A stretch of 64,000 nucleotides of DNA from positions 1,612,001-1,676,000 of the forward strand of contig NC_092353.1 of NCBI RefSeq assembly GCF_963676685.1, read 5' to 3'. Positions 5,100 through 42,527 of the stretch are shown here, in pieces. Below the pieces are notes generated by a model, which saw only the letters and a list, made by a program, of their open reading frames with translations, was not told the DNA's origin and did no database searches. Source of the stretch: Mytilus edulis (Eukaryota). A program made the position numbers and the translations under genes. Within the stretch, counting starts at the first letter, position 1, and each line of letters opens with the position of its first letter.

Positions 5100-6368
5100 G
5101 TGAGTGTTCCAGAATTTTTAAAATTGATCTTAATGCGTGGTGATCCATTTTTTAAGAATTCCTGTGGCTGTGGTGCCTTTAATGAATAGTGATTCATTTT
5201 GTTAGGATTCAGGTGGTGCTTGTAATAAATATAGATTCATTTTGCATGAATACAGGTGCTGCTCCTAATCCTGAACTCATGAGGATTCAGGTGGTGCCAA
5301 ATGAATAGTGATCCATTTTATAAGGATTCAGGTTGTGCTCCTAATGAATAGTGATCCATTTTATAAGGATTTAGGTGGTGCCAAATGAATAGTGATCCAT
5401 TTTGTAAGGATTCAGGTGGTGCTCCTAATGAATAGTGATCCATTTTTAGAAGGATTCAGGTGGTGCTTCTAATGAATAGTGATTCATTTTATAAGGATTC
5501 AGGTGGTACTCCTAATGAATAGTGATCCATTTTGAAAGGATTCAGATGATGCTCCTAATGAATAGTGATCCATTTTGTTAGGATTCAGGTGGTGCTCCAA
5601 ATAAAAAGTGATACATTTTGTATGGATTCAGGTGGTGCTCCTTATAAATAATTGATCTCTTAAGGATCAGGTAGTGGTCCTGATAAAAAGTGATCCATTT
5701 TGTATGGATTCAGGTGGTGCTCCTTTAAATAGTGAGCATTATAAGGATGGGGTAGTGGTCCTGATAAATGGTGATACATTTTGCATTGATTCAGGTGGTG
5801 CTCCTTTAAATAGTGATTAATTTTATAAGGATTCAGGTGGTGCTCCTTTAAATAGTGATTCATTTTATAAGGATTCAAGTGGTGCTTCTATTGAATAGTG
5901 ATCCATTTTGTAAGGATTCAGTTGGTGCTCCTAATGAATAGTGGTCCATTTTGCATGGATTCAGGTGGTGATCCTAATAAATAGGGATCCATTATGTATG
6001 GATTCAGGTGGTGCTAATTTTAAATAATGATCCTTGTAAGGATCAGGTAGTAGTCCTAATAAATAGTGATCAGTTTTGTATGGATTCAGGTGGTGCTGCT
6101 ACTTTTAAATGGTGATTCATTTTGTAAGGACTGGTGGTGGTCCTGATAAATGTTGATCCATTTGGCATGGCTTCAGGCTACTTTTGTAAGGATTCAGTTG
6201 GGGTTTCTAATGAATGGTGTTCCATTTTGTAAGGATTCAGTTGGGGACTTTTTAATAATGGTGATCCATTTTGCATGGATTCAGGTTGTGCTACTTTTAA
6301 ATGATGAACTATTTTGTAGGGATTCAGGTCGTGCTTTACATGAACAGTGATCCATTTTATAAGGATTT
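5100..6368. repeat. ~42-43-bp minisatellite (~30 diverged copies)
   Basis: Unit ggattcaggtggtgctcctaatgaatagtgatccattttgtaa. Confidence 0.9.
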
Positions 6369-16612: not shown

Positions 16613-17436
16613 TATTAGGGCCCTGCCTTTAGGCGGGTCGCCCTATAGTGATCAGTCTGTCCGTCCGTCCGTCCGTAACACTTTAACTTTGTGTCCGCTC
16701 CATATCTAGAGAACCATTATGATTTCATACTTTATACTTTACATGTTTATTAACCACCACCAGAGGGTGTGTCATGATGTATGTACAACTTCCTAGGTCA
16801 AAGGTCAAGGAAAAAAACTTTGGTTTCAGTTGACAACACTGTGTCCTGTGGTGAAGATCGTGTCCGCTCTATAACTTGAGAACCGTTATGATTTCAAAGT
16901 TTATACTTGACATGTATATGAACCAACACCAGAGAGTGTGTCATAATTTATGAACGACTGCCTAGGGCAAAGTTCAAGGTCAAAAACTTTGGTTTCAGTT
17001 GACAACCCCATGTCCTATGGTAAAGATCGTGTCCGCTCTATATCTTGAGAACCGTTATCATTTCAAAGTTTATACTTGACATGTATATAAACCAACACCA
17101 AAGGGTGTGTCATAATTTATGTGCAACTTCCTAGGTCAAAGGTCAAGGTCAAAAACTTTGGTTTCAGTTGACAACCCTATGTCCTATGGTAAAGATCGTG
17201 TCTGCTCTATATCTTGGGAACCGTTATCATTTCAAAGTTTATACTTGACATGTTTATAAACCAACACCAAAGGGTGTGTCATAATTTATTTACAACTTCC
17301 TAGGTCAAAGGTCAAGGTCAAAAACTTTGATTTCAGTTGACAAACTCATGTCCTATGGTAAAGATACAATTTTTTAATGCACATTATTCACAGCGGGGCC
17401 CACAGAGATGGCTCCCATCTCAATGATATCTAGTTT
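16613..17436 (+). mobile_element. HINE/Helentron-like element with four ~170-bp internal repeats
   Basis: subTIR gggccctgc / gcggggccc, (GTCC)n tract and 3' hairpin gagatggctcccatctc. Confidence 0.8.
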
Positions 17437-19059: not shown

Positions 19060-22000
19060 TTATTACAACTTAGATGATACAGATCATGACAGTATTAACA
19101 AGTTTTTGTCCAAGTTGGTGGAGCGAGCTCTGTATGAGCTGGAGTGCTCCTATTGTATTGCAGTGGGAGAGGTATGTACAAGTTCTTATCCAAGTTGGTG
19201 GAGCGAGCTCTGTATGAGCTGGAGTGCTCCTATTGTATTGCAGTGGGAGAGGTATGTACAAGTTCTTGTCCCAGTTGGTGGAGTGAGCTCTGTATGAGCT
19301 GGAGTGCTCCTATTGTATTACAGTTGGAGAGGTTTGTACAAGTTCTTGTCCAATTAATGGTTTCACAAGCTCTGTATGAGCTGGAGTACTCCTATTGTAT
19401 TGCAGTGGGAGAGGTATGTACAAGTTCTTGTCCAAGTTGGTGGAGCGAGCTCTGTATGAGCTGGAGTGATCCTATTGTATTGCAGTGGGAGAGGTATGTA
19501 CAAGTTCTTGTCCAAGTTGGTGGAGCGAGCTCTGTATGAGCTGGTGCTCCTATTGTATTGCAGTGGGAGAGGTATGTACAAGTTCTTGTCCAAGTTGGTG
19601 GAGCAAGCTCTGTATGAGCTGGAGTGCTCCTATTGTATTGCAGTGGGAGAGGTATGTACAAGTTCTTGTCCAAGTTGGTGGAGCAAGCTCTGTATGAGCT
19701 GGAGTGCTCCTATTGTATTGCAGTTGGAGAGGTTTGTACAAGTTCTTGTCCAATTAATGGGTTCACAAGCTTTGTATTCATGAGCTATCGAGTTCTTTTT
19801 GTTTTGTATTTTGAGAGATATGTTGATACCCCGAGTTATTAAGGACATTTTCTATCATCTGGTTAATAGTCATTTGTATGAGCCTCAGCACTCTTCATGT
19901 ATTGGGGGTAGACGATACATACTATAAAACTTGTCCTTAGTTGGTAAAACGACCTCTGTATTATATTCAGTGTTCTTATATTGTATGGCTGATACTTAAT
20001 CTGCTCTGGAAATGATTAGTTGTTACAAAATATTAGAAGTCTTTATACAGATAGGATAAATACTTGATCAGTGTTATAACAAATAAGAATGGATTGCAAT
20101 AAATACAAATCAGACATAAGATTTTCTGCATGCATGTGAAAGATTTAACTGCTACCTCATTACTTTTAATATTAATATGTTCTTGTTTCAGGACAACAGA
20201 ACCATAGACCCACAAACACTAGGTAGAATATCATCATATTATTATCTCAACCACAACACAGTACGCATGTTTAGAGATGAACTCAAACCAGAAAGTTCTA
20301 TAGCAGAACTGTTGGATGTTTTATCTGTAAGTACATAACTTAGGGTGAATGGAAAAATCCTGATTTTTTGGTTGTGTGGTTTAACTTTATTTTGACTCAA
20401 TCAAATGTTATGAAACATATACACAATGCTTATTTATACCAACATGACCAAAAAATCAAATCAAGCTCGAATTTTTATAGCATCACTTTTACTGTTCTTG
20501 AGTTATGGCCCTTTATCTGTAAATACTGTTGAATTTTTCATTTATTTATTTTGCCTCAATCAAATGTTAAAAAACTTATACACAATGCTACACCATAAAA
20601 CACAGATTTCAAGCAGTCACTCTTGAATTAAGTATGAACTTTTAAGTGATTGCAATAGACAGTTACAAGGAAAAGAATTTGAATTACAAAGAAAAGAGTT
20701 CTTTGATAACTGTTCATGTCTTGTTTTCAGTGAGGGCCTTCCGGTATTCTGAAAGATGCATAGAATTAACTTTGTATTAATTTGATTATATTTATTTCAG
20801 AACGCTAATGAGTATGATGAGTTACCTGTCAGACATAATGAAGATCAGCTTAACAGGTAAATGCATCCAAATCTATTTTAATATGTTATTGTAAATAGTG
20901 TAAGCATGTCACTGATTCAGTTTGCTTCGTTCTTTTACGCCAATTTAATAGTGCGTTTATTAATTAGAATATTTGCCTTTACCTAGAGTGCTTCGATCCA
21001 AAACCATTACCATATTTGTCCTATCGCTTGTGGTGAAATATTTAGGCTAAAAGTCTATTCTGTGGTAAAATTAGTATTAATTCAAGCCCCCATTAATTAT
21101 TTCTTAAATTAATGAGATAACTTTTAGTCTAGCAGTATGTGTTTCTACACACATTTCTCTTATACAGAATGATCAGTCAATTGTTTTTAAATAATAGGTT
21201 AAAAATCTTACAAAGAAAAGTAATTGACAGGATTTTGTCAGCAGCTCAACAATGATGAGTTTTATTCATGTGTGCTTTCAAAGTCTGTCAGATGTGTACT
21301 TTCTGTTTTCCAATACTTTGAATGACAATTTGGGTATGCTAAACAGCCCATCTCATGGCATTTTATTTCAACTGAATTTTATTGTTGTTTATATTTTATT
21401 TATTTAGTGAGCTTGCCAAGAAGTTACCTGTGGAAGTTAATCAGTACACATATGACTCGGCCCATACAAAAGCCAATCTGTTGTTACAGGCTCATTTTGG
21501 ACATGGTCAGGTTGGACTACCATCTACAGATTACAACACTGACACCAAGTCTGTTTTAGATCAGGCTATTAGAATATTACAGGTAAGGAAAGGCCCATGG
21601 TCATGGTCTCCATTAATAATTACAACACTAGCTTAGTTTTTGACGCATTTTTTAATTTTTCTCAGGAAGTACATTTTTAATGGAAAAATAAAAGTGTAAT
21701 GGTTCTGGTAATTGATGCTTCATAGAAACATAGAAATAAAACAAACACTTCATGATAATTTTATTTCTAGGCAATGTTAGATGTATCAGCTGATGAAGGC
21801 TGGTTAGTAACATCGTTAAGGATTATGCAGATGGTTCAAATGGTTATTCAAGGTCTCTGGTGTCATGACAACAATCTTTTGACCTTGCCACACATGATGC
21901 CTTACCACCTTGCTTGTTTTAGGTAGGTAGCCATAGCAACTATCTTTCTGCCATTGTCTCCAAAAGCTCATTTTCACACTTGAAGCACATTGTTCTTTTA

Positions 22001-25000
22001 CCATACAATAAGTTCTGTCACAACACAAGTTGCACAATCTCAAATATAAAAATAAGTTGCACAATCTTAAATATAAAAAATAATTGCACAAGCTCAAACA
22101 TGAACACAAGTTGCTTTCATATTTAAAAACAAGTTGCACAATCTTAAATATAAAAACAAGTTGCACAGTCTCAAATATAAAAACAAGTTGCTTAAACTCA
22201 AATATAAAACACATTCAATAAACCCTAAACCAGAAATGTTTGAGTGAATGTTTCTAACTATAATTCCAGGCCATGGAAAGGACATGGAGCTAAGAAGAAA
22301 GGATATCCTGACATAAAGAGCCCTATAGAAACTCTGCCTCAATTAATGGCTGTTTGTGATGGAAGGTTTGAGGCACTTAATGCTATGTTAGGGGAAGAAA
22401 TGGACAGAGCACATCTGGAACAAGTGAGATTTAATAAGACTACCATTTTTTTAATCTTTCAAATTGGAACGTTTTGTAATAAATAACCAGAAACAATATC
22501 AGATTATATAAAAATGCTTGTCTAATCATTGAACAAATGCTAAAATATCATTAGCAGCCATATTGTACCATATCTTAGGGATCACCAAAATCTAAAATCT
22601 AAACTTTAATTTGGTTGTCTTTGACATGTTGCATTTTCTCTAATTGCATTCTTGTTTTTATACGACCGCAAAAATTTAAATTTTTTGGTCGTATATTGCT
22701 ATCACTTTGGCGTTGTCGTCGTCGTCCGAATACTTTTAGTTTTCGCACTCTAACTTTAGTAAAAATGAATAGAATTCAATGAAATTTTAACACAAGGTTT
22801 ATGACGACAAAAGGAAGGTTGGGATTGATTTTGGGAGTTTTGGTCCCAACATTTTAGGAATTAGGGGCCAAAAAGGGCCCAAATAAGCATTTTCTTGGTT
22901 TTCGCACTATAACTATAGTTTAAGTGAATAGAAATCTATGAAATTTTGACATAAGGTTTATGACCACAAAAGGACGGTTGGGATTGATTTTGGGAGTTTT
23001 GGTCCCAACAGTTTAGGAATTTTAAAAGGGCCAAAAAAGGGCCCAAATAAGCATTATTCTTGGTTTTCGCACAATAACTTTAGTATAAGTAAATAGAAAT
23101 CAATGAAATTCAAACACAAGGTTTATGACCACAAAAGGACGGTTGGGATTGATTTTTGGAGTTGAGGTCACAACAGTTTATGAATTAGGGGCCAAAAATA
23201 GGCCCAAATAAGCATTATTTTTGGTTTTTGCACCATGACTTTAGTATAAGTAAATAGAAATCTATGAAATTTAAACACAAGGTTTATGACCATAAAAGGA
23301 AGGTTGGGTTTGCTTTTGGGAGTTTTGGTCCCAACAGTTTAGGAATAAGGGGCCCAAAGGGTCCAAAATTGAACTTTGTGTGATTTCATCAAAAATTGAA
23401 TAATTGGGGTTCTTTGATATGCCGAATCTAACTATGTATGTAGATTCTTAATTTTTGGTCCCGTTTTCAAATTGGTCTACATTAAGGTCCAAAGGGTCCA
23501 AAATTAAACTTAGTTTGATTTTAACAAAAATTGAATCCTTGGGGTTCTTTGATATGCTGAATTTAAAAATGTACTTAGATTTTTAATTATTGGCCTAGTT
23601 TTCAAGTTGGTCCAAATGGGGGTCCAAAATTAAACTTTGTTTGATTTCATCAAAAATTGAATAAATGGGTTCTTTGATATGCCAAATCTAACTGTGTATG
23701 TAGATTCTTAATTTTTGGTCCAGTTTTCAAATTGGTCTACATTAAGGTCCAAAGGGTCCAAAATTAAACTAAGTTTGATTTTAACAAAAATTAAATTCTT
23801 GGGCTTATTTGATATGCTTTATCTAAAAATGTACTTTGATTTTTGATTATGGGCCCAGTTTTCAAGTTGGTCCAAATCAGGATTCCATATCAAGTATTGT
23901 GCAATAGCAAGAAATTTTCAATTGCACAGTATTGCACAATAGCAAGAAATATCTAATTGCACAATATTGTGCAATAGCAATTAATTTTCAATTGGAGTTA
24001 TCTTTCTTTGAATAGAATAGTAGTTGATAATATATGTTGGAAATTTGCCAGACATGACTATGATGTCATTTTCTATTTTTATTTGCCAATAACTTTATGT
24101 AAATAACTTCATTGGAAATTTGCCAATATAAAATGTTGCTGATGAAGCTTTTTTTCCTTATCTTATCTAAAATGTTTTTAGATAATGTATGGTGGACATT
24201 TGCCAGACATGACTATGATGTCATTTTCTATTTTTATTTGCCAATAACTTTATGTAAATAACTTCATTGGAAATTTGCCAATATAAAATGTTGCTGATGA
24301 AGTTTTTTTTTATTGTTTTATACAATAAACAATGTATATTCACTTTTACTACCAACCAATCTTTACCATTCAGTGATAACAAGCACTTTATTTTACATTT
24401 TAATATTTTATGATGTATTTAAAAGAGTAGTTATTGTTGCAAACTCCATTAGAAATTTGAATTGATATCAGTTTTGGAAAAAGGGAAACGGGGATGTGAA
24501 AAAAAAGGGGGGGGGGGTTAAATTTTTCTCATTTCAGATTTCTTTAATTGATTTGTAAAATCTTGACATTTGTTTTGTGTAAAAAAAACCATGTAATGTC
24601 AAAATTTGATCACAATCCAAATTCAGAGCTGTATCACGCTTGAATGTTTTGTCCATACTTGCCCCAACTGTTCAGGGTTCGATCTCTGCGGTTGTATAAA
24701 GCTGCGCCCTGCGGAGCACCTGGTTATAGATTAAAATGTTGGTTTTCCTGTTTGAGTTGTTTTACACTAGTCATTTTAGGGCCTTTTATATTTTCCAGCA
24801 CTGTGTTAAAGGCGGTACTTTTACCTTAATGGTTTACTTTTTACACATTGTGACTTGGATGAAGAGTTGTCTCATTGGCACTCAGCCCACATCTTCTTAT
24901 ATCTTTTTGTTTGGATCTTGAATTTTAGTTTTTATTAGGAATACTAGAATTGCCAGTGAAATCAAGGTACAATTGGACAAGTGTTGAAACAATAAGTAAG

Positions 25001-28000
25001 AGGCAGTACTTCGAATATGTTTTTGCGAAAAACGAAAAGGAATAAGTCACGGATTGAAAACTGTCTCCAAATTTGGATCTTTTCTCAAAACTTGGTGTTT
25101 CCTGTGGATAAAAGATTGTTTCAAAGACAAATTAAGGAAGTACTAAACACTACATTTATAATGTCATATCACAAATATTTCCAACTTTGTATATTTTAAG
25201 AGGAATTTCAGCTCAAAGAAATCCGTCTTTTCCTTTAGTAATATAGATATAGACTTGTGGGATAGATTATGCCAAGAAATGTTCATTATTATATCCTTTG
25301 TTTCACAGATATACCAGACCATTAGTAAACTTCCCCAGATTTCTGTAAAATTATCTCTAGAAGGTTGGTGGGAGGGAGGAACAGGAGAACAGGAAAAACG
25401 GCCTATACATTCACCTTTACCAGGTAAGTTAATAATCTATAGAAGGTTGGTGGGAGGAAGGAACAGGAGAAACGACCTATACCTTCACCTTTACCAGGTA
25501 AGTTAATTATCTATAGAAGGTTGGTGGGAGGGAGGAACAGGAGAAACGACCTATACATTCACCTTTACCAGGTAAGTTAATTATCTATAGAAGGTTGGTG
25601 GGAGGAAGGAATAGGAGAACAGGAGAAACGACCTATACATTCACCTTTACCAGGTAAGTTAATTATCTAAAGAAGGTTGGTAGGAGGGAGGAACAGGAGA
25701 AACGACCTATACCTTCACCTTTACCAGGTAAGTTAATTATCTCTTAGAAGGTTGGTGGGAGGGAGGAACAGGAGAACAGGAGAAACGGCCTATACATTCA
25801 CCTTTACCAGGTAAGTTAATTATCTATAAAAGGTTGGTAGGAGGGAGGAACAGGAGAAACGACCTATACCTTCACCTTTACCAGGTAAGTTAATTATCTC
25901 TTAGAAGGTTGGTGGGAGGGAGGAACAGGAGAACAGGAGAAGCGACCTATACATTCACCTTTACCAGGTAAGTTAATTATCTATAGAAGGTTAGTGGGAG
26001 GGAGGAACAGGAGAACAGGAGAAACGACCTATACATTCACCTTTACCAGGTAAGTTAATTATCTATAGAAGGTTGGTGGGAGGGAGGAACAGGAGAAACG
26101 ACCTATACATTCACCTTTACCAGGTAAGTTAATTATCTAAAGAAGGTTGGTAGGAGGGAGGAACAGGAGAAACGACCTATACCTTCACCTTTACCAGGTA
26201 AGTTAATTATCTCTTAGAAGGTTGGTGGGAGGGAGGAACAGGAGAACAGGAGAAGCGACCTATACATTCACCTTTACCAGGTAAGTTAATTATCTATAGA
26301 AGGTTAGTGGGAGGGAGGAACAGGAGAACAGGAGAAACGACCTATACATTCACCTTTACTAGGTAAGTTAATTATCTAAAGAAGGTTGGTAGGAGGGAGG
26401 AACAGGAGAAACGACCTATACCTTCACCTTTACCAGGTAAGTTAATTATCTCTTAGAAGGTTGGTGGGAGGGAGGAACAGGAGAACAGGAGAAACGGCCT
26501 ATACATTCACCTTTACCAGGTAAGTTAATTATCTATAGAAGGTTGGTGGGAGGGAGGAACAGGAGAACAGGAGAAACGGCCTATACATTCACCTTTACCA
26601 GGTAAGTTAATTATCTATAGAAGGTTGGTGGGAGGGAGGAACAGGAGAACAGGAGAAACGACTTATACATTCACCTTTACCAGGTAAGTTAATTATCTAT
26701 AGAAGGTTGGTGGGAGGGAGGAACAGGAGAACAGGAGAAACGGCCTATACATTCACCTTTACCAGGTAAGTTAATTATCTATAGAAGGTTGGTGGGAGGG
26801 AGGAACAGGAGAACAGGAGAAACGACTTATACATTCACCTTTACCAGGTAAGTTAATTATCTATAGAAGGTTGGTGGGAGGGAGGAACAGGAGAACAGGA
26901 GAAGCGACCTATACATTCACCTTTACCAGGTAAGTTAATTATCTATAGAAGGTTGGTGGGAGGAAGGAATAGGAGAACAGGAGAAACGACCTATACATTC
27001 ACCTTTACCAGGTAAGTTAATTATCTATAGAAGGTTGGTGGGAGGGAGGAACAGGAGAACAGGAGAAGCGACCTATACATTCACCTTTACCAGGTAAGTT
27101 AATTATCTATAGAAGGTTGGAAGGAGGAAGGAATAGGAGAACAGGAGAAACGACCTATACATTCACCTTTACCAGGTAAGTTAATTATCTATAGAAGGTT
27201 GGTGGGAGGGAGGAACAGGAGAACAGGAGAAACGGCCTATACATTCACCTTTACCAGGTAAGTTAATTATCTATAGAAGGTTGGTGGGAGGGAGGAACAG
27301 GAGAACAGGAGAAACGGCCTATACATTCACCTTTACCAGGTAAGTTAATTATCTATAGAAGGTTGGTGGGAGGGAGGAACAGGAGAACAGGAGAAACGAC
27401 CTATACATTCACCTTTACCAGGTAAGTTAATTATCTATAGAAGGTTGGTGGGAGGGAGGAACAGGAGAACAGGAGAAACGGCCTATACATTCACCTTTAC
27501 CAGGTAAGTTAATTATCTATAGAAGGTTGGTGGGAGGGAGGAACAGGAGAACAGGAGAAACGGCCTATACATTCACCTTTACCAGGTAAGTTAATTATCT
27601 ATAGAAGGTTGGTGGGAGGGAGGAACAGGAGAAACGGCCTATACATTCACCTTTACCAGGTAAGTTAATTATCTATAGAAGGTTGGTGGGAGGGAGGAAC
27701 AGGAGAACAGGAGAAGCGACCTATACATTCACCTTTACCAGGTAAGTTAATTATCTATAGAAGGTTAGTGGGAGGGAGGAACAGGAGAACAGGAAAAGCG
27801 ACCTATACATTCACCTTTACCAGGTAAGTTAATTATCTATAGAAGGTTGGTGGGAGGGAGGAACAGGAGAAGCGACCTATACATTCACCTTTACCAGGTA
27901 AGTTAATTATCTATAGAAGGTTGGTGGGAGGGAGGAACAGGAGAAACGACCTATACCTTCACCTTTACCAGGTAAGTTAATTATCTATAGAAGGTTGGTG

Positions 28001-31000
28001 GGAGGGAGGAACAGGAGAACAGGAGAAACGACTTATACATTCACCTTTACCAGGTAAGTTAATTATCTATAGAAGGTTGGTGGGAGGGAGGAACAGGAGA
28101 ACAGGAGAAACGACCTATACATTCACCTTTACCAGGTAAGTTAATTATCTATAGAAGGTTGGTGGGAGGAAGGAATAGGAGAACAGGAGAAACGACCTAT
28201 ACATTCACCTTTACCAGGTAAGTTAATTATCTATAGAAGGTTGGTGGGAGGGAGGAACAGGAGAACAGGAGAAACGGCCTATACATTCACCTTTACCAGG
28301 TAAGTTAATTATCTATAGAAGGTTGGTGGGAGGAAGGAATAGGAGAACAGGAGAAACGACCTATACATTCACCTTTACCAGGTAAGTTAATTATCTATAG
28401 AAGGTTGGTGGGAGGGAGGAACAGGAGAAACGGCCTATACATTCACCTTAACCAGGTAAGTTAATTATCTATAGAAGGTTGGTGGGAGGAAGGAATAGGA
28501 GAACAGGAGAAGCGACCTATACATTCACCTTTACCAGGTAAGTTAATTATCTATAGAAGGTTGGTGGGAGGGAGGAACAGGAGAACAGGAGAAACGGCCT
28601 ATACATTCACCTTTACCAGGTAAGTTAATTATCTATAGAAGGTTAGTGGGAGGGAGGAACAGGAGAACAGGAGAAACGGCCTATACATTCACCTTTACCA
28701 GGTAAGTTAATTATCTATAGAAGGTTGGTGGGAGGGAGGAACAGGAGAACAGGAGAAGCGACCTATACCTTCACCTTTACCAGGTAAGTTAATTATCTAT
28801 AGAAGGTTGGAAGGAGGAAGGAACAGGAGAACAGGAGAAACGGCCTATACATTCACCTTTACCAGGTAAGTTAATTATCTATAGAAGGTTGGTGGGAGGG
28901 AGGAACAGGAGAACAGGAGAAGCGACCTATACATTCACCTTTACCAGGTAAGTTAATTATCTATAGAAGGTTGGTGGGAGGGAGGAACAGGAGAACAGGA
29001 GAAGCGACCTATACATTCACCTTTACCAGGTAAGTTAATTATCTATAGAAGGTTGGTGGGAGGGAGGAACAGGAGAAACGGCCTATACATTCACCTTTAC
29101 CAGGTAAGTTAATTATCTATAGAAGGTTGGTGGGAGGGAGGAACAGGAGAACAGGAGAAACGACTTATACATTCACCTTTACCAGGTAAGTTAATTATCT
29201 ATAGAAGGTTGGTGGGAGGGAGGAATAGGAGAAACGGCCTATACATTCACCTTTACCAGGTAAGTTAATTATCTATAGAAGGTTGGTGGGAGGGAGGAAC
29301 AGGAGAACAGGAGAAATGACTTATACATTCACCTTTACCAGGTAAGTTAATTATCTATAAAAGGTTGGTAGGAGGGAGGAACAGGAGAACAGGAGAAACG
29401 ACTTATACATTCACCTTTACCAGGTAAGTTAATTATCTATAGAAGGTTGGTGGGAGGGAGGAACAGGAGAACAGGAGAAATGACTTATACATTCACCTTT
29501 ACCAGGTAAGTTAATTATCTATAGAAGGTTGGTAGGAGGGAGGAACAGGAGAACAGGAGAAACGGCCTATACATTCACCTTTACCAGGTAAGTTAATTAT
29601 CTCTTAGAAGGTTAGTGGGAGGGAGGAACAGGAGAACAGGAGAAACGGCCTATACATTCACCTTTACCAGGTAAGTTAATTATCTATAGAAGGTTGGTGG
29701 GAGGGAGGAACAGGAGAAACGACCTATACCTTCACCTTTACCAGGTAAGTTAATTATCTATAGAAGGTTGGTAGGAGGGAGGAACAGGAGAAACGACCTA
29801 TACCTTCACCTTTACCAGGTAAGTTAATTATCTAAAGAAGGTTGGTAGGAGGGAGGAACAGGAGAAACGACCTATACCTTCACCTTTACCAGGTAAGTTA
29901 ATTATCTATAGAAGGTTGGTAGGAGGGAGGAACAGGAGAAACGACCTATACCTTCACCTTTACCAGGTAAGTTAATTATCTATAGAAGGTTGGTGGGAGG
30001 GAGGAACAGGAGAACAGGAGAAGCGACCTATACATTCACCTTTACCAGGTAAGTTAATTATCTATAGAAGGTTGGTGGGAGGGAGGAACAGGAGAACAGG
30101 AGAAACGGCCTATACATTCACCTTTACCAGGTAAGTTAATTATCTATAGAAGGTTGGTGGGAGGGAGGAACAGGAGAACAGGAGAAACGGCCTATACATT
30201 CACCTTTACCAGGTAAGTTAATTATCTAAAGAAGGTTGGTAGGAGGGAGGAACAGGAGAAACGACCTATACCTTCACCTTTACCAGGTAAGTTAATTATC
30301 TATAGAAGGTTGGTAGGAGGGAGGAACAGGAGAAACGACCTATACCTTCACCTTTACCAGGTAAGTTAATTATCTATAGAAGGTTGGTAGGAGGGAGGAA
30401 CAGGAGAACAGGAGAAACGGCCTATACATTCACCTTTACCAGGTAAGTTAATTATCTATAGAAGGTTGGTGGGAGGGAGGAACAGGAGAACAGGAGAAAC
30501 GGCCTATACATTCACCTTTACCAGGTAAGTTAATTATCTATAGAAGGTTGGTGGGAGGGAGGAACAGGAGAACAGGAGAAGCGACCTATACATTCACCTT
30601 TACCAGGTAAGTTAATTATCTATAGAAGGTTGGTGGGAGGGAGGAACAGGAGAACAGGAGAAACGGCCTATACATTCACCTTTACCAGGTAAGTTAATTA
30701 TCTATAGAAGGTTGGTGGGAGGAAGGAATAGGAGAACAGGAGAAACGGCCTATACATTCACCTTTACCAGGTAAGTTAATTATCTATAGAAGGTTGGTGG
30801 GAGGGAGGAACAGGAGAACAGGAGAAACGGCCTATACATTCACCTTTACCAGGTAAGTTAATTATCTATAGAAGGTTGGTGGGAGGAAGGAATAGGAGAA
30901 CAGGAGAAGCGACCTATACATTCACCTTTACCAGGTAAGTTAATTATCTATAGAAGGTTGGTGGGAGGGAGGAACAGGAGAAACGGCCTATACATTCACC

Positions 31001-33606
31001 TTAACCAGGTAAGTTAATTATCTATAGAAGGTTGGTGGGAGGGAGGAACAGGAGAACAGGAGAAGCGACCTATACATTCACCTTTACCAGGTAAGTTAAT
31101 TATCTATAGAAGGTTGGTGGGAGGGAGGAACAGGAGAACAGGAGAAACGGCCTATACCTTCACCTTTACCAGGTAAGTTAATTATCTATAGAAGGTTGGT
31201 GGGAGGAAGGAATAGGAGAACAGGAGAAGCGACCTATACATTCACCTTTACCAGGTAAGTTAATTATCTATAGAAGGTTAGTGGGAGGGAGGAACAGGAG
31301 AACAGGAGAAACGACTTATACATTCACCTTTACCAGGTAAGTTAATTATCTATAGAAGGTTGGTGGGAGGGAGGAACAGGAGAACAGGAGGAGCGACCTA
31401 TACATTCACCTTTACCAGGTAAGTTAATTATCTATAGAAGGTTGGTGGGAGGGAGGAACAGGAGAACAGGAGAAACGACTTATACATTCACCTTTACCAG
31501 GTAAGTTAATTATCTCTTAGAAGGTTGGTGGGAGGGAGGAACAGGAGAACAGGAGAAACGACTTATACATTCACCTTTACCAGGTAAGTTAATTATCTCT
31601 TAGAAGGTTGGTGGGAGGGAGGAACAGGAGAACAGGAGAAACGACTTATACATTCACCTTTACCAGGTAATAACAATTGTAACGCATTATAAAAACACAG
31701 TATTACCAGGAAATATAACTCTTTAGATAGGATTAGGGTAATTATAATGTGTTTTGATAGGTGGAGAAGATTTTGGGTTTAGTAAAGAAAGGCTTTTAGA
31801 ACTAATGGCCAGTGTGGCACCTAATACAAGTTCAAGGTCATATATCGTACACCTTTAATCATATAAATAAGCCTTTGACTGTTTTCTGCTCTTTGGTCAG
31901 GTAGTTGTATTTTTGACACATTCCCCATTTCCATTCTCAATTTTATGAAGTGCGGGAAAATAGGGTGGGTAAATTGATACATGTAAGTGATTCATGTTAT
32001 TGCTCTGATATTAGACAGCAACATATCAACATAATAAAACACAGAGAGACACACCAAGACAGCTAACCGTTGAGTCTTTATGAACTACAAGTGTCAAAAT
32101 CATTTGTCAGGCTTAAAATTGTCTAAAGTCTGACAAGTTTTTAGTGATTTGATTAGAGACTAAATTATCTACAAAAATGTAAAACATGCCAAAAGATTGA
32201 AACAATGATCATCATTAACAAGGCTTCCATTGCCAGTAGACATGACATTTAAGACTAGCTAATGGGAGTATTTAATCCACCGTTTTCACCTATTCCAATC
32301 AATTGAATGATAAGAAAAGTGATGTTTTTTTATACAGGTGCTAAAATACAGGATGATAATTGGATGGAGGTACATGCTGACCAAGAATATGTTCTGAGAG
32401 TTAATATGGACAGAATAAACAAAATAAAGGTAGAGTATGACAAAAATATTCACTCTTACTACCAGGTTGTATTAAGAAGGTGCGATTAGACCCTTTTTTG
32501 ACCAAAAAAAACAACATTATTACAAAATCTGTTAAGACATGAATATCCCTCCTGTATAAAGATTATTCATGGAGATTTTACAGTCAAGCATGCATGAATT
32601 AAAATTGTTTATAAATTATACTATAAATAACATTTTCAACACAGTGATTTTTTTCTTGACAACACAAAGAAAGGATATTTCAATGAAATCACTAACACAT
32701 TTATTGTATATTTTTTTAATCAACTTATAAAAAAATTAATGTAAATCTTATAATTAAAAGTTATTTGTTATAGTGAACAAAATGCCATAACAAGGTCCTA
32801 ATCTCAAATGATAACTTAGTTGCCTTTTGATGTTGCATTTATGTTGTCTCAAAATTCAGATAGAATTGTCTATCTTGGTCTGTAATGGGATTGTGATATT
32901 TATAAATGTTTAATCATTCACACATGTAAATATTAAAACTTTCTTCCAAATTTGCTGGGTACAATGAAGTGTTTCATTTTTAATTCCCAATGTAAAATGA
33001 ATGCTTTCTTTACTTCCAGTGCTCTCTAGCACTTTGATCTGTGTTTGGAGGTTTCTAGGTATACCCCACATTTGATCTGTGTTTGGAGGTTTCTGTCATA
33101 CTGAGGTATACCCCACATTTGATATGTGTTTGGAGGTTTCTGTCATACTGAGGTATACCCCACATTTCTTTTCTTCACATTAAAATCAGGGAAACAAATG
33201 AATTGTAATGAAATTCATTTTGAAGCAAAATCATTGATATATATAGCAAACATAATGTAACTCTAAGTATATGACATTTCAGAAGCATGACAGTAAAGCC
33301 TTTGCACCACGATTTCCAAAACCAAAAGACGAAGGATGGTTCCTATTAGTGGGTGACATAGAAAACAAAGAAGTTGTAGCATTAAAACGAGTGGGCTACA
33401 TCCGTGGTCGGTCCTCACAACAGATTGCTATAATCATGCCAGACATTGTAGGCCGTGTGATATACACTGTATATATGATGAGTGATTCCTATTTAGGACT
33501 AGACCAACAATATGACATATGTTTGGATGTGATACCTGCTAGTATAGAATCACAGGTCAACACAGAACTTGTCGGAGAACTAGATTTTGGTGACCTACAA
33601 TTGTAA
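19060..33606 (+). CDS. ASCC3: Activating signal cointegrator 1 complex subunit 3 (Ski2-like helicase), 3' portion (C-terminal Sec63 region); 5' exons lie outside the window
   Basis: Phase-compatible GT-AG exons: 19060-19171 (YYNLDDTDHDSINKFLSKLVERALYELECSYCIAVGE), 20192-20326 (DNRTIDPQTLGRISSYYYLNH...), 20801-20856 (NANEYDELPVRHNEDQLNS), 21408-21582 (ELAKKLP...HTKANLLLQAH...DTKSVLDQAIRILQ), 21771-21922 (AMLDVSADEGWL...), 22270-22423, 25309-25423, 32338-32429 (WMEVHADQEYVL) and 33283-33606 (PRFPKPKDEGWFL...MSDSYLGLDQQYDI, stop). The motifs match the C-terminus of vertebrate ASCC3. Confidence 0.96.
19099..19775 (+). repeat. Tandem array (~8.5 copies, 80-bp unit) of the 3' end of ASCC3 exon 19060-19171 plus its donor
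   Basis: Unit acaagttcttgtccaagttggtggagcgagctctgtatgagctggagtgctcctattgtattgcagtgggagaggtatgt; caagttggtg recurs at 19111 and 19191. Confidence 0.95.
22020..22212. repeat. 27-bp intronic minisatellite
   Basis: About 7 copies of aaacaagttgcacaatctcaaatataa. Confidence 0.85.
22655..24725 (+). mobile_element. Large HINE/Helentron-like element with two families of internal tandem repeats
   Basis: subTIR tttatacgaccgc / gcggttgtataaa, (GTC)n tract, four ~160-bp repeats followed by a second repeat family, and 3' hairpin gctgcgccctgcggagc. Confidence 0.82.
25345..31670 (+). repeat. Tandem array (~80 copies, 82/74-bp units) of the 3' end of an ASCC3 exon plus its 5' splice site
   Basis: Unit aattatctatagaaggttggtgggagggaggaacaggag(aacaggag)aaacggcctatacattcacctttaccaggtaagtt. 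The first copy is the real exon 25309-25423. Copy number is estimated from array length. Confidence 0.97.
33030..33166. repeat. ~47-bp tandem repeat x3
   Basis: Unit catttgatctgtgtttggaggtttctgtcatactgaggtatacccca. Confidence 0.85.
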
Positions 33607-39242: not shown

Positions 39243-40649
39243 TAATCAAATGACAAAATCAAAAGCCCAAACACATCAAACGAATGGATAACAACTGCCA
39301 TATTCCTGACTTGGTACAGGCATTTGCTTATGTAGTAAATGGTGGATAAAACCTGGGTTTTATAGCTAACCTGAGGGTGTTTGAAGAATACTTTCTTAAA
39401 ACCTAAATTTGGACCACCTATTAAATAAGATGTGTTGTACATATGAATTAAATCAATATCTTAAAGGAAACATTTGATAAAACCAGGAATGCCAAATAGC
39501 CTTAAAATATGAAGGAAAAAAGGCAACACTTCACAAGTTCAAGAAGTTATTATATCAAATCAGTTTCCAGATGGAGAATCTTCAATCCCTGACACAAAGT
39601 TTTAAACGGAAAACCCAGCTTTGAACAATTGATACCTGTGTCCTAGAAATCTTGTGACATTGACCAACGGAAATTAGAAGTGATATTGGGCAAATGTAAA
39701 CCTTAGTGATATGATATAAAACTAACATTTAGTTCTAAGTATTAAACAAAGCCCACACAAAACATGATTTACAAATTGTGTGTATCCAAAGTGCTTTTCT
39801 AGACTTAAATTCATCAGAAATGCTTCAGCTTGATAATTTTACACGATCGTGTGTAAACTCTGTGCATACAAAAGATCATATTGTCTAAGAACAGAAACCG
39901 ATGTAGACCTTTTGCAAGGCATTTTTAAAACCAATTCAAAGAATATCAACTAGTGGCATACCTATTTTGTTTGGTAGCGTATTATAACGTAACATAAAGA
40001 TCGAATGTTTTCAATGTTATTATTTGAGATATAGGGTATTTAACTTCATTCAGTGGCAATCTTCCATTTAATAATCACCGACTGTTTTCTTGTACAAATA
40101 GCTTAAAGTTACCGTGAAAACAATCTACTGATACGTATTACAAGGTGGAAATAGGTCAACCAAACTACCTATTGTTTGGATCGTGTTTACAAACTTTTGG
40201 TATAATCAAAGAAACCGATCAGTAATGATTGATATTAATAAATGAATTAATTCCTTGGAGATCGGTAGTTTTGTTAATTTAATTTGTGGTACTATGCATA
40301 AAACGATGCATTCTGGACTCAGTATGCCGATGATAGTTCATGCGAAAACACCAGTATGATTAAAAGACAAAATGGAATCGGCATACGCTCTTATAGTTTT
40401 TGAGTACCCCTCCTTTTTCTAACGCATCAGGCGTGCAATAAATATAAAAAATGTAGATATTATTTAAACTAAGTGTAAAATAAAACAGCGATACAAATAT
40501 TTAAATGTTTACTTTAAACAAAACACGAATAATAATGCGTGATTACCCAATACAATAAATTAAAACCTGGCAGTCCATGTAATTTAAACTTTCTTATGTA
40601 CATGTTGAACTTTGTATTTTCATGTTGAACACTTGTTTTATTTTGGAAT

Positions 40650-42527
40650 ATGCTGCGTTATTTTAAGGACCCTCAATCTCCAAACGTGCAAGTTGCGGAC
40701 GGCCTAGCACAAACGGTGGCGTTATGTCAGTTATGTGACAAAAATACAATCAAGTGGAAGTGTGTTGACTGCTCAGAATTACTTTGTAGTGATTGCAAGA
40801 AAATTCACGAACGCGGTAAAGCCACTCGGAACCATCAGATATCTGCCGTCAAAGATCTAAACGAGGAAATTCTTGAGAGTTCGGTTTTCAATTTGGAGTG
40901 CACTTTACACCATAATGCATGCTCCATGTACTGCGTCACGTGTAATCAATGTGCTTGCGCAAACTGTGTGACTGGCAATCATTCCGGACATACATTCCAA
41001 GATCTGAAAGCGCTGTTAGACAAGAAAAGGAAAGAATTAAAAACAGTTCTTAACGATGTGGAATCTAGGTTCATTCCGGAAACCCAACAGAGAATTGACT
41101 CTTTACCGGCGCATATTCGCGCGCACGAGAAAAACATAGAAGGTTTGAAATTACAAATGGAAAAGAGAGCAAGTGCATTGAAATTAGCTGTAGATAAATG
41201 TTTAAAACATCATTATACAGAACTGTATAGATATTCAGAGGACAGAATAAGCAAGTTCTCAGGACATAAAGTCAACTTATCACAACAAATGAAAGAACTG
41301 AAAGAAAACCAAATAAAATTGAGAAAACTTATTCAGCCTAACAGTACTTCTGACGTCGCAACACTGCTCATGTCCTCACTCAATATACTAGCACCGGAAG
41401 GTACAGAAATCGCTCATGTCGAGTTCTTAACAGGTAATCTGACCGAAAATGATATACAACAGGAATTCGGATCACTCGGATTTAGTAGACGGATTGAAAG
41501 ACAACACACGTTTGATGTCGAACCTACTAATAATACTGCCCAAATTAATAACCGGGTACGGAATGCAGTTCAACAAAATGATGACATGGTGCAAAGTGAC
41601 GTTCCACTAATTGACAATGTAGTCAGATCGTCTAGGTTAACTAGTGGCCTAGAACTCAAAACGTTAAATACAAGTTTGTCGTCCGTTACATCAATTTGTT
41701 TAGCTCAAAACGATACATTATGGGTAGGCTGCGCAGGAAGCCGACGATTGGAACTTATCAATAACAGTGAACGCGCTCGAGATTTGCCACCCGTTATGAC
41801 GAACGTTCTAGGATTCTCTTTGGCCGGAAACGGCGATCTTTTTATTACGGACTTTGATAACTGTAAATTGCGCAAACGTGAATACCCGTCAGGAAAGTTA
41901 ACACTGGTTAAGGATTTTAAACCTCAAAATCCGGTTTCTGTTTACGTTAACCTGCAGGAAAATTCTAGTATGATCTCTGTCGGTCTTATTGATTCCGCCC
42001 GAAAATTGACAGACGATTACGAAAACATAAAAGGAACTGTTGTGATGATTACTTCGAACGGTGTAGTGACAAACACGTTTGGAAATGGTCAGCCAATACA
42101 TTTTACTGTGCCAAACAGGATTACTGTCGGCGGATATTCCAACAGTTTACTTGTAATAGATTCCATCACACCAGAGAGTGGGCGGATAATATCACTTTCA
42201 AAGGATGGAAACATACAATTTACATACAACCCAATCCAGAATAACACACTGAACCTGTTCAACCCAACAGATCTTGTTTGTACATTAAATGGGCAGATCT
42301 TAATATGTGATGTTGGCAATGACCTTCTACATATTCTTGATCTTAACGGTTTACTCGACCACTACATTGATACAAAGTCTTGTGGAATAGAACGTCCGTG
42401 GAGTTTGGCTCTGTATGGTGACAGCACTCTTTTTATCGGAACGTTTACTTACAAAGGCGGGAAAAGGTCAAAGGATACACAGAAAGGGGTGGTTTATATA
42501 GTTCCAGACTTCAATAGTAATAGATAA
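40650..42527 (+). CDS. RING-less TRIM-like protein: two B-box zinc fingers, coiled coil, C-terminal NHL-like beta-propeller
   Basis: 625-aa uninterrupted ORF with B-box1 (CQLCD..KWKCVDCSELLCSDCKKIH...H), B-box2 (CTLHH..CSMYCVTCNQCACANCVTGNHSGH), a helical region and propeller repeats (FNPTDLVCT..GQILICD, RPWSLAL). The true start may lie in an upstream exon. Confidence 0.9.
   Translation: MLRYFKDPQSPNVQVADGLAQTVALCQLCDKNTIKWKCVDCSELLCSDCKKIHERGKATRNHQISAVKDLNEEILESSVFNLECTLHHNACSMYCVTCNQCACANCVTGNHSGHTFQDLKALLDKKRKELKTVLNDVESRFIPETQQRIDSLPAHIRAHEKNIEGLKLQMEKRASALKLAVDKCLKHHYTELYRYSEDRISKFSGHKVNLSQQMKELKENQIKLRKLIQPNSTSDVATLLMSSLNILAPEGTEIAHVEFLTGNLTENDIQQEFGSLGFSRRIERQHTFDVEPTNNTAQINNRVRNAVQQNDDMVQSDVPLIDNVVRSSRLTSGLELKTLNTSLSSVTSICLAQNDTLWVGCAGSRRLELINNSERARDLPPVMTNVLGFSLAGNGDLFITDFDNCKLRKREYPSGKLTLVKDFKPQNPVSVYVNLQENSSMISVGLIDSARKLTDDYENIKGTVVMITSNGVVTNTFGNGQPIHFTVPNRITVGGYSNSLLVIDSITPESGRIISLSKDGNIQFTYNPIQNNTLNLFNPTDLVCTLNGQILICDVGNDLLHILDLNGLLDHYIDTKSCGIERPWSLALYGDSTLFIGTFTYKGGKRSKDTQKGVVYIVPDFNSNR

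What the first reader, a model, noticed from the sequence alone, without database searches (positions are those of the whole stretch)
25345..31670. A 6.3-kb intronic satellite built from ~80 candidate recursive-splicing (ratchet) sites in ASCC3
Seen: almost every 74/82-bp unit ends in ...cattcacctttacCAG|GTAAGT, a pyrimidine tract plus CAG acceptor fused directly to a consensus 5' splice site. The unit is a copy of the last ~75 nt of the real exon and its donor. Known: YAG|GT is the signature of recursive splice sites, and CAGGTAAGT is fully complementary to the U1 snRNA 5' end. Inference: splicing the true donor (25424) to the CAG of any later unit regenerates an identical CAG|GTAAGT. The array could therefore be removed stepwise as minimal-size introns with no change to the mRNA. 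That would explain why ~80 decoy donors are tolerated in a conserved gene, although direct use of any distal donor would cause a frameshift or a premature stop (the read-through frame stops at 25506). The AG|GT core looks nearly invariant while other unit positions vary. This would be a self-excising splice-site satellite.
Basis: partly seen in the sequence, partly recalled or inferred. Interest (0 to 1): 0.88.

Follow-up and report, generated by a model that had tools for sequence, protein, structure and literature searches.

The report
Exon-end splice-donor minisatellite in mussel ASCC3
An intron of the blue-mussel ASCC3 gene starts with 78 tandem copies of the preceding exon's last 79 bases, each carrying a perfect splice-donor signal; this is a large example of a known kind of repeat ("mirage" minisatellite), and stepwise recursive splicing of it is possible but neither shown nor needed.

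Summary
Exon 25309-25423 of ASCC3 is followed by 78 tandem units (25424-31666: 51 of 82 bp, 20 of 74 bp, 7 of 83 bp). 77 units end in CAG and all begin GTAAGT. The unit occurs nowhere else in the 1.37-Gb genome.

The whole unit is a copy of exon bases 25345-25423. The copy was probably seeded by a GTAA microhomology. The older, weaker donor context GTAATA survives after the last unit.

The splice core is not conserved above background (P about 0.28). Twenty units carry in-frame stops and 20 units shift the frame, so the units are under no coding constraint.

A public Mytilus edulis ASCC3 protein model from another assembly threads about 1,060 residues through this array. The array is therefore not an artefact of this assembly, and it corrupts annotation.

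The kind is known: amphioxus "mirages", and the human F7, IFI6, CBS, LMNB2 and PDGF boundary minisatellites. In F7 the most upstream of several identical donors is used, and no AG precedes the donors. This scan has already reported such arrays elsewhere in this genome.

The sequence permits recursive splicing.

Verdict: a new, very large member of a known kind.

The parts
25309..25423 (+). ASCC3 coding exon (C-terminal Sec63 region). Its last 79 nt (25345-25423) are the parent copy of the repeat. The authentic donor is CAG|GTAAGT at 25423|25424.
   Evidence: Translation and exon mapping. Exact 12-mer matches to the public M. edulis ASCC3 protein P0274. Alignment of the exon copy with the units.
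25424..31666 (+). 78 tandem units (51 of 82 bp, 20 of 74 bp, 7 of 83 bp; 34 sequence types; mean pairwise identity 96.4%). Each unit begins GTAAGTTAAT; 77 end in CAG and 1 in TAG. Each also holds an internal AG|AAGG that delimits a 63- or 55-nt pseudo-exon.
   Evidence: The unit is found only at this locus in the own genome.
31667..32337 (+). Non-repetitive remainder of the intron. It starts GTAATAAC, the probable ancestral and weaker donor context, and ends in the real acceptor with a T-rich tract and CAG at 32335-32337.
   Evidence: Sequence reading and the acceptor comparison.
32338..32430 (+). Next ASCC3 exon (begins GAKIQDDNWMEVHADQEY in phase 1).
33283..33603 (+). Last ASCC3 coding exon with its stop codon. 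It fixes the gene identity.
   Evidence: Best solved-structure match is 8alz_B, ASCC3, E = 6e-32, far above BRR2.

Best explanation
This is a 'mirage'-type minisatellite, a tandem amplification of the host gene's own exon edge into the adjoining intron.

Origin (inferred). The last 79 nt of the exon were duplicated. The GTAA inside the exon (25345-25348) and the GTAA that opens the intron probably provided the microhomology. A 3-nt insertion turned the junction into the perfect donor GTAAGT. Slippage and unequal crossing-over then amplified that unit to 78 copies.

Selection (tested). No selection on the units is detectable.

Tolerance (inferred from precedent). The spliceosome pairs the exon's acceptor with the first donor downstream of it (exon definition, or 5'-to-3' 'scanning'). 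The other 77 identical donors therefore lie silent inside a 6.9-kb intron, which is removed with the real acceptor at 32337. Occasional use of a later donor or of a unit pseudo-exon would give a premature stop and presumably mRNA decay.
For: - Unit anatomy and its end-to-end alignment with exon bases 25345-25423; the GTAATA donor context retained after the last unit.
- The unit is unique to this locus in 1.37 Gb, so it is not a dispersed satellite or transposon.
- 34 unit types, with distinct types at both edges and a homogenised centre, and no decay of identity with distance. This is typical of unequal-exchange turnover.
- Variation looks neutral. The splice core is not specially conserved. 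There are four kinds of nonsense change, and 31 of 78 units would disrupt the frame if used as pseudo-exons.
- The single-copy junction gives a loop of exactly the homologous length. From LPQI to ADQEY there are 49 residues in both mussel and oyster. The same loop is present in other molluscs.
- An independent M. edulis assembly holds the array with other unit variants: EKQP occurs 7 times there and 0 times here.
- A second exon-end array lies in the same gene, and earlier scan notes report many more in this genome.
- Published precedent. Mirage repeats do not disturb splicing (PMC3087553). In F7 the pseudo-donors are functional, but the most upstream one is the one chosen. The same paper lists IFI6, CBS, LMNB2 and PDGF boundary minisatellites (PMC1557585).
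Against: - No RNA data could be reached, so first-donor use at 25423 rests on homology and precedent, not on reads.
- The F7 work is mammalian. It reports that perfect-consensus pseudo-sites can shift some splicing toward themselves. All 78 sites here are perfect, so some mis-splicing is likely.
- The microhomology origin and the order of events are inferred from one haplotype.
- Earlier scan notes claim that donor-anchored arrays are enriched in this genome. If that is true, something more than neutral slippage may act. My crude pattern count showed no excess over its reversed-pattern control.
Confidence: 0.68

Rival explanations
1. Recursive ('ratchet') splicing. The donor at 25423 is spliced co-transcriptionally to the CAG of a later unit. 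This regenerates CAG|GTAAGT, so the array is removed in several steps that leave no trace in the mRNA.
For: - 77 of 78 units carry CAG|GTAAGT, which is perfectly complementary to the mussel U1.
- The 20 nt before each unit's AG are 75% pyrimidine, within the range of the gene's real acceptors (0.55-0.80).
- Each site is followed 74-83 nt later by another donor, the layout of a cryptic recursive exon (PMC8605326).
- The unit acceptors are transcribed well before the real acceptor 6.9 kb downstream.
Against: - The tract is poor in T (0.35, against 0.40-0.75 in the real acceptors).
- The regenerated donor and the next donor are identical. In known cases the ratchet donor is the stronger one, and that prevents inclusion of the cryptic exon. 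Equal strength predicts frequent inclusion of frame-breaking units.
- The intron is only 6.9 kb, 6.2 kb of it the array itself, whereas known ratchet points sit in long introns.
- The core is not conserved above background.
- The F7 array, whose donors have no AG, is tolerated all the same.
Confidence: 0.18
2. A bank of cassette exons. The internal AG|AAGG to CAG segment of the 82- and 83-bp units is a 63-nt in-frame pseudo-exon. It could be spliced in to lengthen a surface loop of the C-terminal Sec63 domain by 21 residues per unit.
For: 47 of 78 units give a clean in-frame 63-nt segment between an AG and a perfect donor. The gene predictor behind the public M. edulis model accepted many unit pieces as exons.
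Against: - 31 of 78 units are frame-shifting, stop-bearing or lack the AG.
- Four independent kinds of nonsense change have spread in the array (TGG to TAG twice, CGA to TGA, TTA to TAA).
- The internal acceptor has a weak tract (50% pyrimidine).
- The loop length with one copy equals that of other molluscs.
- The public model is an ab-initio chimera that switches between all three frames.
Confidence: 0.05
3. Assembly artefact. The array is real but its length or unit order is an error of the long-read assembly.
For: Tandem arrays of 6 kb are hard to assemble. No DNA reads could be laid.
Against: - 34 unit types in an irregular order with edge-specific variants.
- An independent assembly, on a 482-kb contig against a chromosome-scale one here, encodes about 1,060 residues (about 3.2 kb) from the same array, with different unit variants.
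Confidence: 0.05

Closest known systems
Amphioxus 'mirage' minisatellites (Adh3, globins BflGb6 and BflGb9; Canestro et al. 2002 as cited in PMC3087553)
   Same: Tandem repeats that span an exon-intron boundary of the host gene. Many units carry AG/GT. Splicing stays regular. Length is unstable, evolution is concerted, and the edge units escape homogenisation.
   Different: Those arrays have 2-6 or so units of 10-160 bp. This one has 78 units and 6.2 kb, in a mollusc, and every donor is a perfect U1 complement.
Human boundary minisatellites: F7 IVS7 37-bp VNTR, and IFI6 (6-16), CBS IVS13, LMNB2 and PDGF (PMC1557585)
   Same: The first monomer spans the exon-intron junction, so the authentic donor is followed by identical pseudo-donors. 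In F7 these are functional but silent, and the most upstream one is selected.
   Different: F7 has 5-9 copies of a weak donor, UGG|GUGGGU, with no AG, so no junction can be regenerated. IFI6 and CBS also use the next two pseudo-sites. Here there are 78 copies of CAG|GTAAGT, so recursion is at least formally possible.
Recursive splice sites / ratchet points of Drosophila and vertebrates (PMC8605326; bioRxiv 10.1101/006163)
   Same: A juxtaposed acceptor and donor, (Y)nAG|GTAAGT, followed by a short cryptic exon with its own donor. Splicing into the site regenerates a 5' splice site.
   Different: Known sites are single, ultraconserved and in long introns, and their regenerated donor is stronger than the cryptic exon's donor. 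Here the sites are 78 young repeat copies in a 6.9-kb intron, with equal donors and no excess conservation.
Intron gain by tandem duplication of an AGGT-containing exon segment (Rogers model; Hellsten et al. 2011, PMC3265369)
   Same: A duplication that carries AG|GT supplies both a donor and an acceptor, so one copy can be spliced out and the mRNA restored.
   Different: No new intron is created here. The duplication lies at an existing donor and simply lengthens the existing intron.

Membership tests
Exon-boundary ('mirage') minisatellite | Tandem repeat whose first monomer spans an exon-intron boundary of the host gene | tested here: met
   The parent copy 25345-25423 is the exon end, and units follow head to tail from 25424.
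Exon-boundary ('mirage') minisatellite | Unit derived from the host gene itself, not from a dispersed repeat | tested here: met
   The own-genome search with three units matches only G000:C10:1637349-1643666, which is this locus.
Exon-boundary ('mirage') minisatellite | Regular splicing of the host gene is kept (authentic, most upstream site used) | tested here: inconclusive
   Indirect only. The single-copy junction gives a loop of the same length as in oyster and other molluscs. No RNA reads.
Exon-boundary ('mirage') minisatellite | Minisatellite dynamics: variable units, concerted evolution, differences between alleles | tested here: met
   34 unit types, a homogenised centre and distinct edges. 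Another M. edulis assembly carries unit variants absent here. Copy-number polymorphism itself was not measured.
Recursive splice site (ratchet point) | Juxtaposed polypyrimidine tract, AG and GTRAGT | tested here: met
   77 of 78 units have CAG|GTAAGT. The tract is 75% pyrimidine but only 35% T.
Recursive splice site (ratchet point) | Downstream cryptic exon with its own donor, weaker than the regenerated donor | tested here: not met
   A downstream donor exists 74-83 nt away, but it is identical in sequence to the regenerated one. The criterion is from PMC8605326.
Recursive splice site (ratchet point) | Lies in a long intron | tested here: not met
   The intron 25424-32337 is 6.9 kb, of which 6.2 kb is the array.
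Recursive splice site (ratchet point) | Acceptor-donor motif conserved above its surroundings | tested here: not met
   Within the array, one of the 9 core columns varies. P = 0.28, and P = 0.49 for the invariant run. Conservation across species was not testable.
Recursive splice site (ratchet point) | Splicing intermediates: exon-to-site junction reads, saw-tooth coverage, lariats | not testable with these tools

The most novel reading that the evidence does not exclude
The array acts as a splicing treadmill. While the polymerase is still transcribing the 6.9-kb intron, the exon's donor is spliced to a unit's CAG. The identical donor is regenerated and the step repeats, so 78 perfect decoy donors are cleared stepwise without any trace in the mRNA. 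Boundary minisatellites whose exon ends in YAG would then be self-excising by construction. That could help explain why they accumulate so freely in this genome.
Probability: 0.15. Interest if true: 0.7.

Novelty: new member of a known kind. Interest (0 to 1): 0.32.

Why it matters
- It is a natural experiment in 5' splice-site choice. One authentic donor is followed by 77 exact copies of itself, all perfect U1 complements, in a conserved housekeeping gene. The human cases have 5-25 mostly weak copies.
- With RNA data it would separate three models: first-donor (scanning or exon definition), proximity to the acceptor, and recursive splicing.
- There is a practical cost. The array has already wrecked the public M. 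edulis ASCC3 model, which carries about 1,060 spurious residues, so such arrays need masking or RNA support in mollusc annotation.
- As an object it is not new. The kind is described in amphioxus and human, and this scan has reported it repeatedly in this genome.

Tried and rejected
- The look-up of encoding contigs for the M. edulis model P0274 was closed. The other assembly's array DNA could therefore not be compared unit by unit.
- A protein search with the read-through ORF 25162-25503 found no 63-200-aa fragment. The 50% representatives held no mussel sequence for the last exon. No Mytilus transcript-derived ASCC3 appeared in the two region searches, which list only the best 120 hits in the 0.55-1.75x length range, so fragments of 200-1200 aa were never searched.
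- Exons were searched one by one by reference. The joined (spliced) protein was not built or searched.
- A genome-wide count of triple AGGTAAGT at 55-85-nt or 25-55-nt spacing gave 1306 and 644 matches. The reversed-pattern controls gave 847 and 857, so this crude count shows no enrichment.
- Rejected: a dispersed satellite or transposon origin.
- Rejected: selective conservation of the splice core.
- Rejected: coding constraint on the pseudo-exons.
- Papers linking recursive splicing with tandem repeats or minisatellites: none found that propose it for such arrays.
- The original mirage paper (PMC117041) is not held. It is cited through PMC3087553.

Full report
WHAT IS THERE

The window holds the 3' part of ASCC3 on the + strand. 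The last exon matches human ASCC3 (8alz_B, E = 6e-32) far better than BRR2. Mapping of homologues and exact 12-mer matches to the public Mytilus edulis ASCC3 protein place exons at about 19060, 20192, 20801, 21408, 21771, 22270, 25309, 32338 and 33283. Earlier notes of this scan call the genome blue mussel. The identical exon peptides agree with M. edulis or a very close relative.

Exon 25309-25423 ends ...CCTTTACCAG|GTAAGT. From 25424 to 31666 there are 78 head-to-tail units: 51 of 82 bp, 20 of 74 bp and 7 of 83 bp.
- All units begin GTAAGTTAAT. 77 end in CAG and one in TAG.
- CAGGTAAGT occurs 77 times on the + strand, only here, and not once elsewhere in the window on either strand.
- The mussel's own U1 genes start ATACTTACCTG, so the 9-mer is a perfect complement.
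- The other seven ASCC3 donors in the window are all imperfect.

ORIGIN

The unit aligns over its full length with exon bases 25345-25423. There are three differences:
- a 3-nt insertion (exon GTAAAATT, unit GTAAGTTAATT);
- one or two substitutions;
- in the 74-bp variant, loss of one copy of an internal 8-nt direct repeat.

After the last unit the intron continues GTAATAAC. The simplest history is a duplication of the exon's last 79 nt, bounded by GTAA in the exon and GTAA at the start of the intron. The junction then changed to the perfect donor, and that unit was amplified. This order of events is inferred.

The exon is the parent and not the product. Its peptide (GWWEGG and the following loop) is shared with oyster, Mactra and other molluscs. 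The distance from LPQI to ADQEY is 49 residues in both mussel and oyster when one copy is joined to the next exon. I counted this from the separate exon translations. I did not build or search a joined protein.

The unit is found nowhere else in the 1.37-Gb assembly, so it is not a dispersed satellite or a transposon part.

DYNAMICS AND SELECTION

- There are 34 unit types. The edges hold private types and the centre is dominated by a few.
- Mean pairwise identity is 96.4%, with no decay with distance. This is the usual picture of unequal exchange.
- Of 83 alignment columns, 21 vary. Of the 9 columns of CAG|GTAAGT, one varies. That is not fewer than chance gives (P = 0.28).
- The 12-column invariant run around the core is what random placement gives (P = 0.49).
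- The internal AG|AAGG-to-CAG segment is a 63-nt in-frame pseudo-exon in 47 units. The other 31 are frame-shifted, stop-bearing or lack a splice dinucleotide.
- Four kinds of nonsense change have spread in the array. There is therefore no coding constraint.

INDEPENDENT ASSEMBLY

The public protein 'ASCC3 [Mytilus edulis]' (A0A8S3V832, 1530 aa, from a 482-kb contig) has the same flanking exons. Between them it runs for about 1,060 residues through array pieces in all three frames. It contains the unit variant EKQP seven times, and that variant does not occur in this window.

The array therefore exists at multi-kilobase length in another assembly, with different unit variants. It is not an artefact of this assembly. 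The model itself is an ab-initio chimera and is no evidence for splicing. Its Sec63 domain is split by the spurious stretch.

CONSEQUENCES OF USING OTHER SITES

Read-through stops at 25504-25506. Use of the donor at 25497 puts the next exon out of frame, with a stop after 19 codons.

HOW IT MOST LIKELY WORKS

The kind is known.
- Amphioxus 'mirages' are minisatellites that span exon-intron boundaries. Many carry AG/GT, they do not disturb splicing, they are unstable in length, and their edge units escape homogenisation (PMC3087553).
- Human F7, IFI6, CBS, LMNB2 and PDGF have minisatellites whose first monomer spans the junction.
- In F7 the pseudo-donors are functional, yet only the most upstream one is used, by a 5'-to-3' search that starts from the exon. 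The F7 donor is UGG|GUGGGU, so no acceptor is regenerated there (PMC1557585). Tolerance of reiterated donors therefore does not need recursion.

I take the same to hold here. The acceptor at 25308 and the first donor define the exon, and the rest goes out with the intron. This step is inferred, not shown.

RECURSION

The sequence allows it.
- The acceptor tract is 75% pyrimidine, within the range of the gene's real acceptors, though poor in T.
- A further donor follows 74-83 nt downstream, as at known ratchet points.
- The unit acceptors are transcribed long before the real one.

Against it stand three points.
- Known ratchet points have a regenerated donor stronger than the cryptic exon's donor, which keeps that exon out. 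Here the two are identical, so frequent inclusion of frame-breaking units would be expected.
- Known sites lie in long introns. This intron is 6.9 kb.
- Known sites are conserved above their surroundings. Here there is no excess (PMC8605326).

I put about 0.18 on an appreciable share of transcripts taking a recursive step. I put less on recursion being the reason the array is tolerated.

NOT TESTABLE HERE

No reads were laid.

CONTEXT

- A second array in the same gene (19098-19753, 8 units of 80 bp, exon end plus GAG|GTATGT) has the same build. The public gene model uses its first donor, but that is only a prediction.
- Three earlier follow-ups in this genome classed similar arrays as mirage minisatellites and found them frequent. 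I checked their two literature leads and they hold.
- My own crude genome-wide pattern count showed many arrays with a periodic AGGTAAGT. One on contig 1 has a 92-bp period and more than 85 units. The count showed no excess over a reversed-pattern control.

VERDICT

The object is a very large new member of a known kind. The recursive-splicing reading is a legitimate but untested hypothesis. It is not needed to explain tolerance, and it fails two of the defining features that could be checked.

Noticed in passing
window 19098-19753: A second exon-end array in the same gene: about 8 units of 80 bp that copy the end of exon 19060-19172 plus its donor GAG|GTATGT. One internal unit and the last partial unit carry a diverged stretch (CCAATTAATGG...) that continues into the intron, which suggests an older duplication.
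   Followed up: partly
protein P0274 (A0A8S3V832_MYTED), residues about 336-1392: The public M. edulis ASCC3 gene model is an ab-initio fragment. It has a spurious start (matching window 18288) and about 1,060 residues threaded through the array in three frames. Its Sec63 domain is split by them.
   Followed up: yes
G000:C8:42702771-42728200, also contigs C1204 and C1405: The U1 snRNA genes lie in tandem arrays with a period of about 1,353 bp. At least 42 copies score above the Rfam cut-off, and their 5' end is the canonical ATACTTACCTG.
   Followed up: partly
G000:C1:8977032-8985043 and beyond: Another array of at least 87 units with a 92-bp period, each unit carrying AGGTAAGT and a TTCTTACAG-like tract. 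It is at least as large as the ASCC3 array. Whether it starts at an exon end was not checked.
   Followed up: no
window 40629-42524 (+): An uninterrupted 632-codon ORF with two B-box zinc fingers (Pfam PF00643, E = 2.7e-12; PF22586). No family matched the C-terminal two thirds.
   Followed up: partly
window 16691-17365, 22739-23877, 5180-6367: Further intronic tandem repeats of ASCC3 (169 bp x4, 161 bp x3.9, 135/260 bp, 43 bp x24). None was examined for an exon-edge origin.
   Followed up: no
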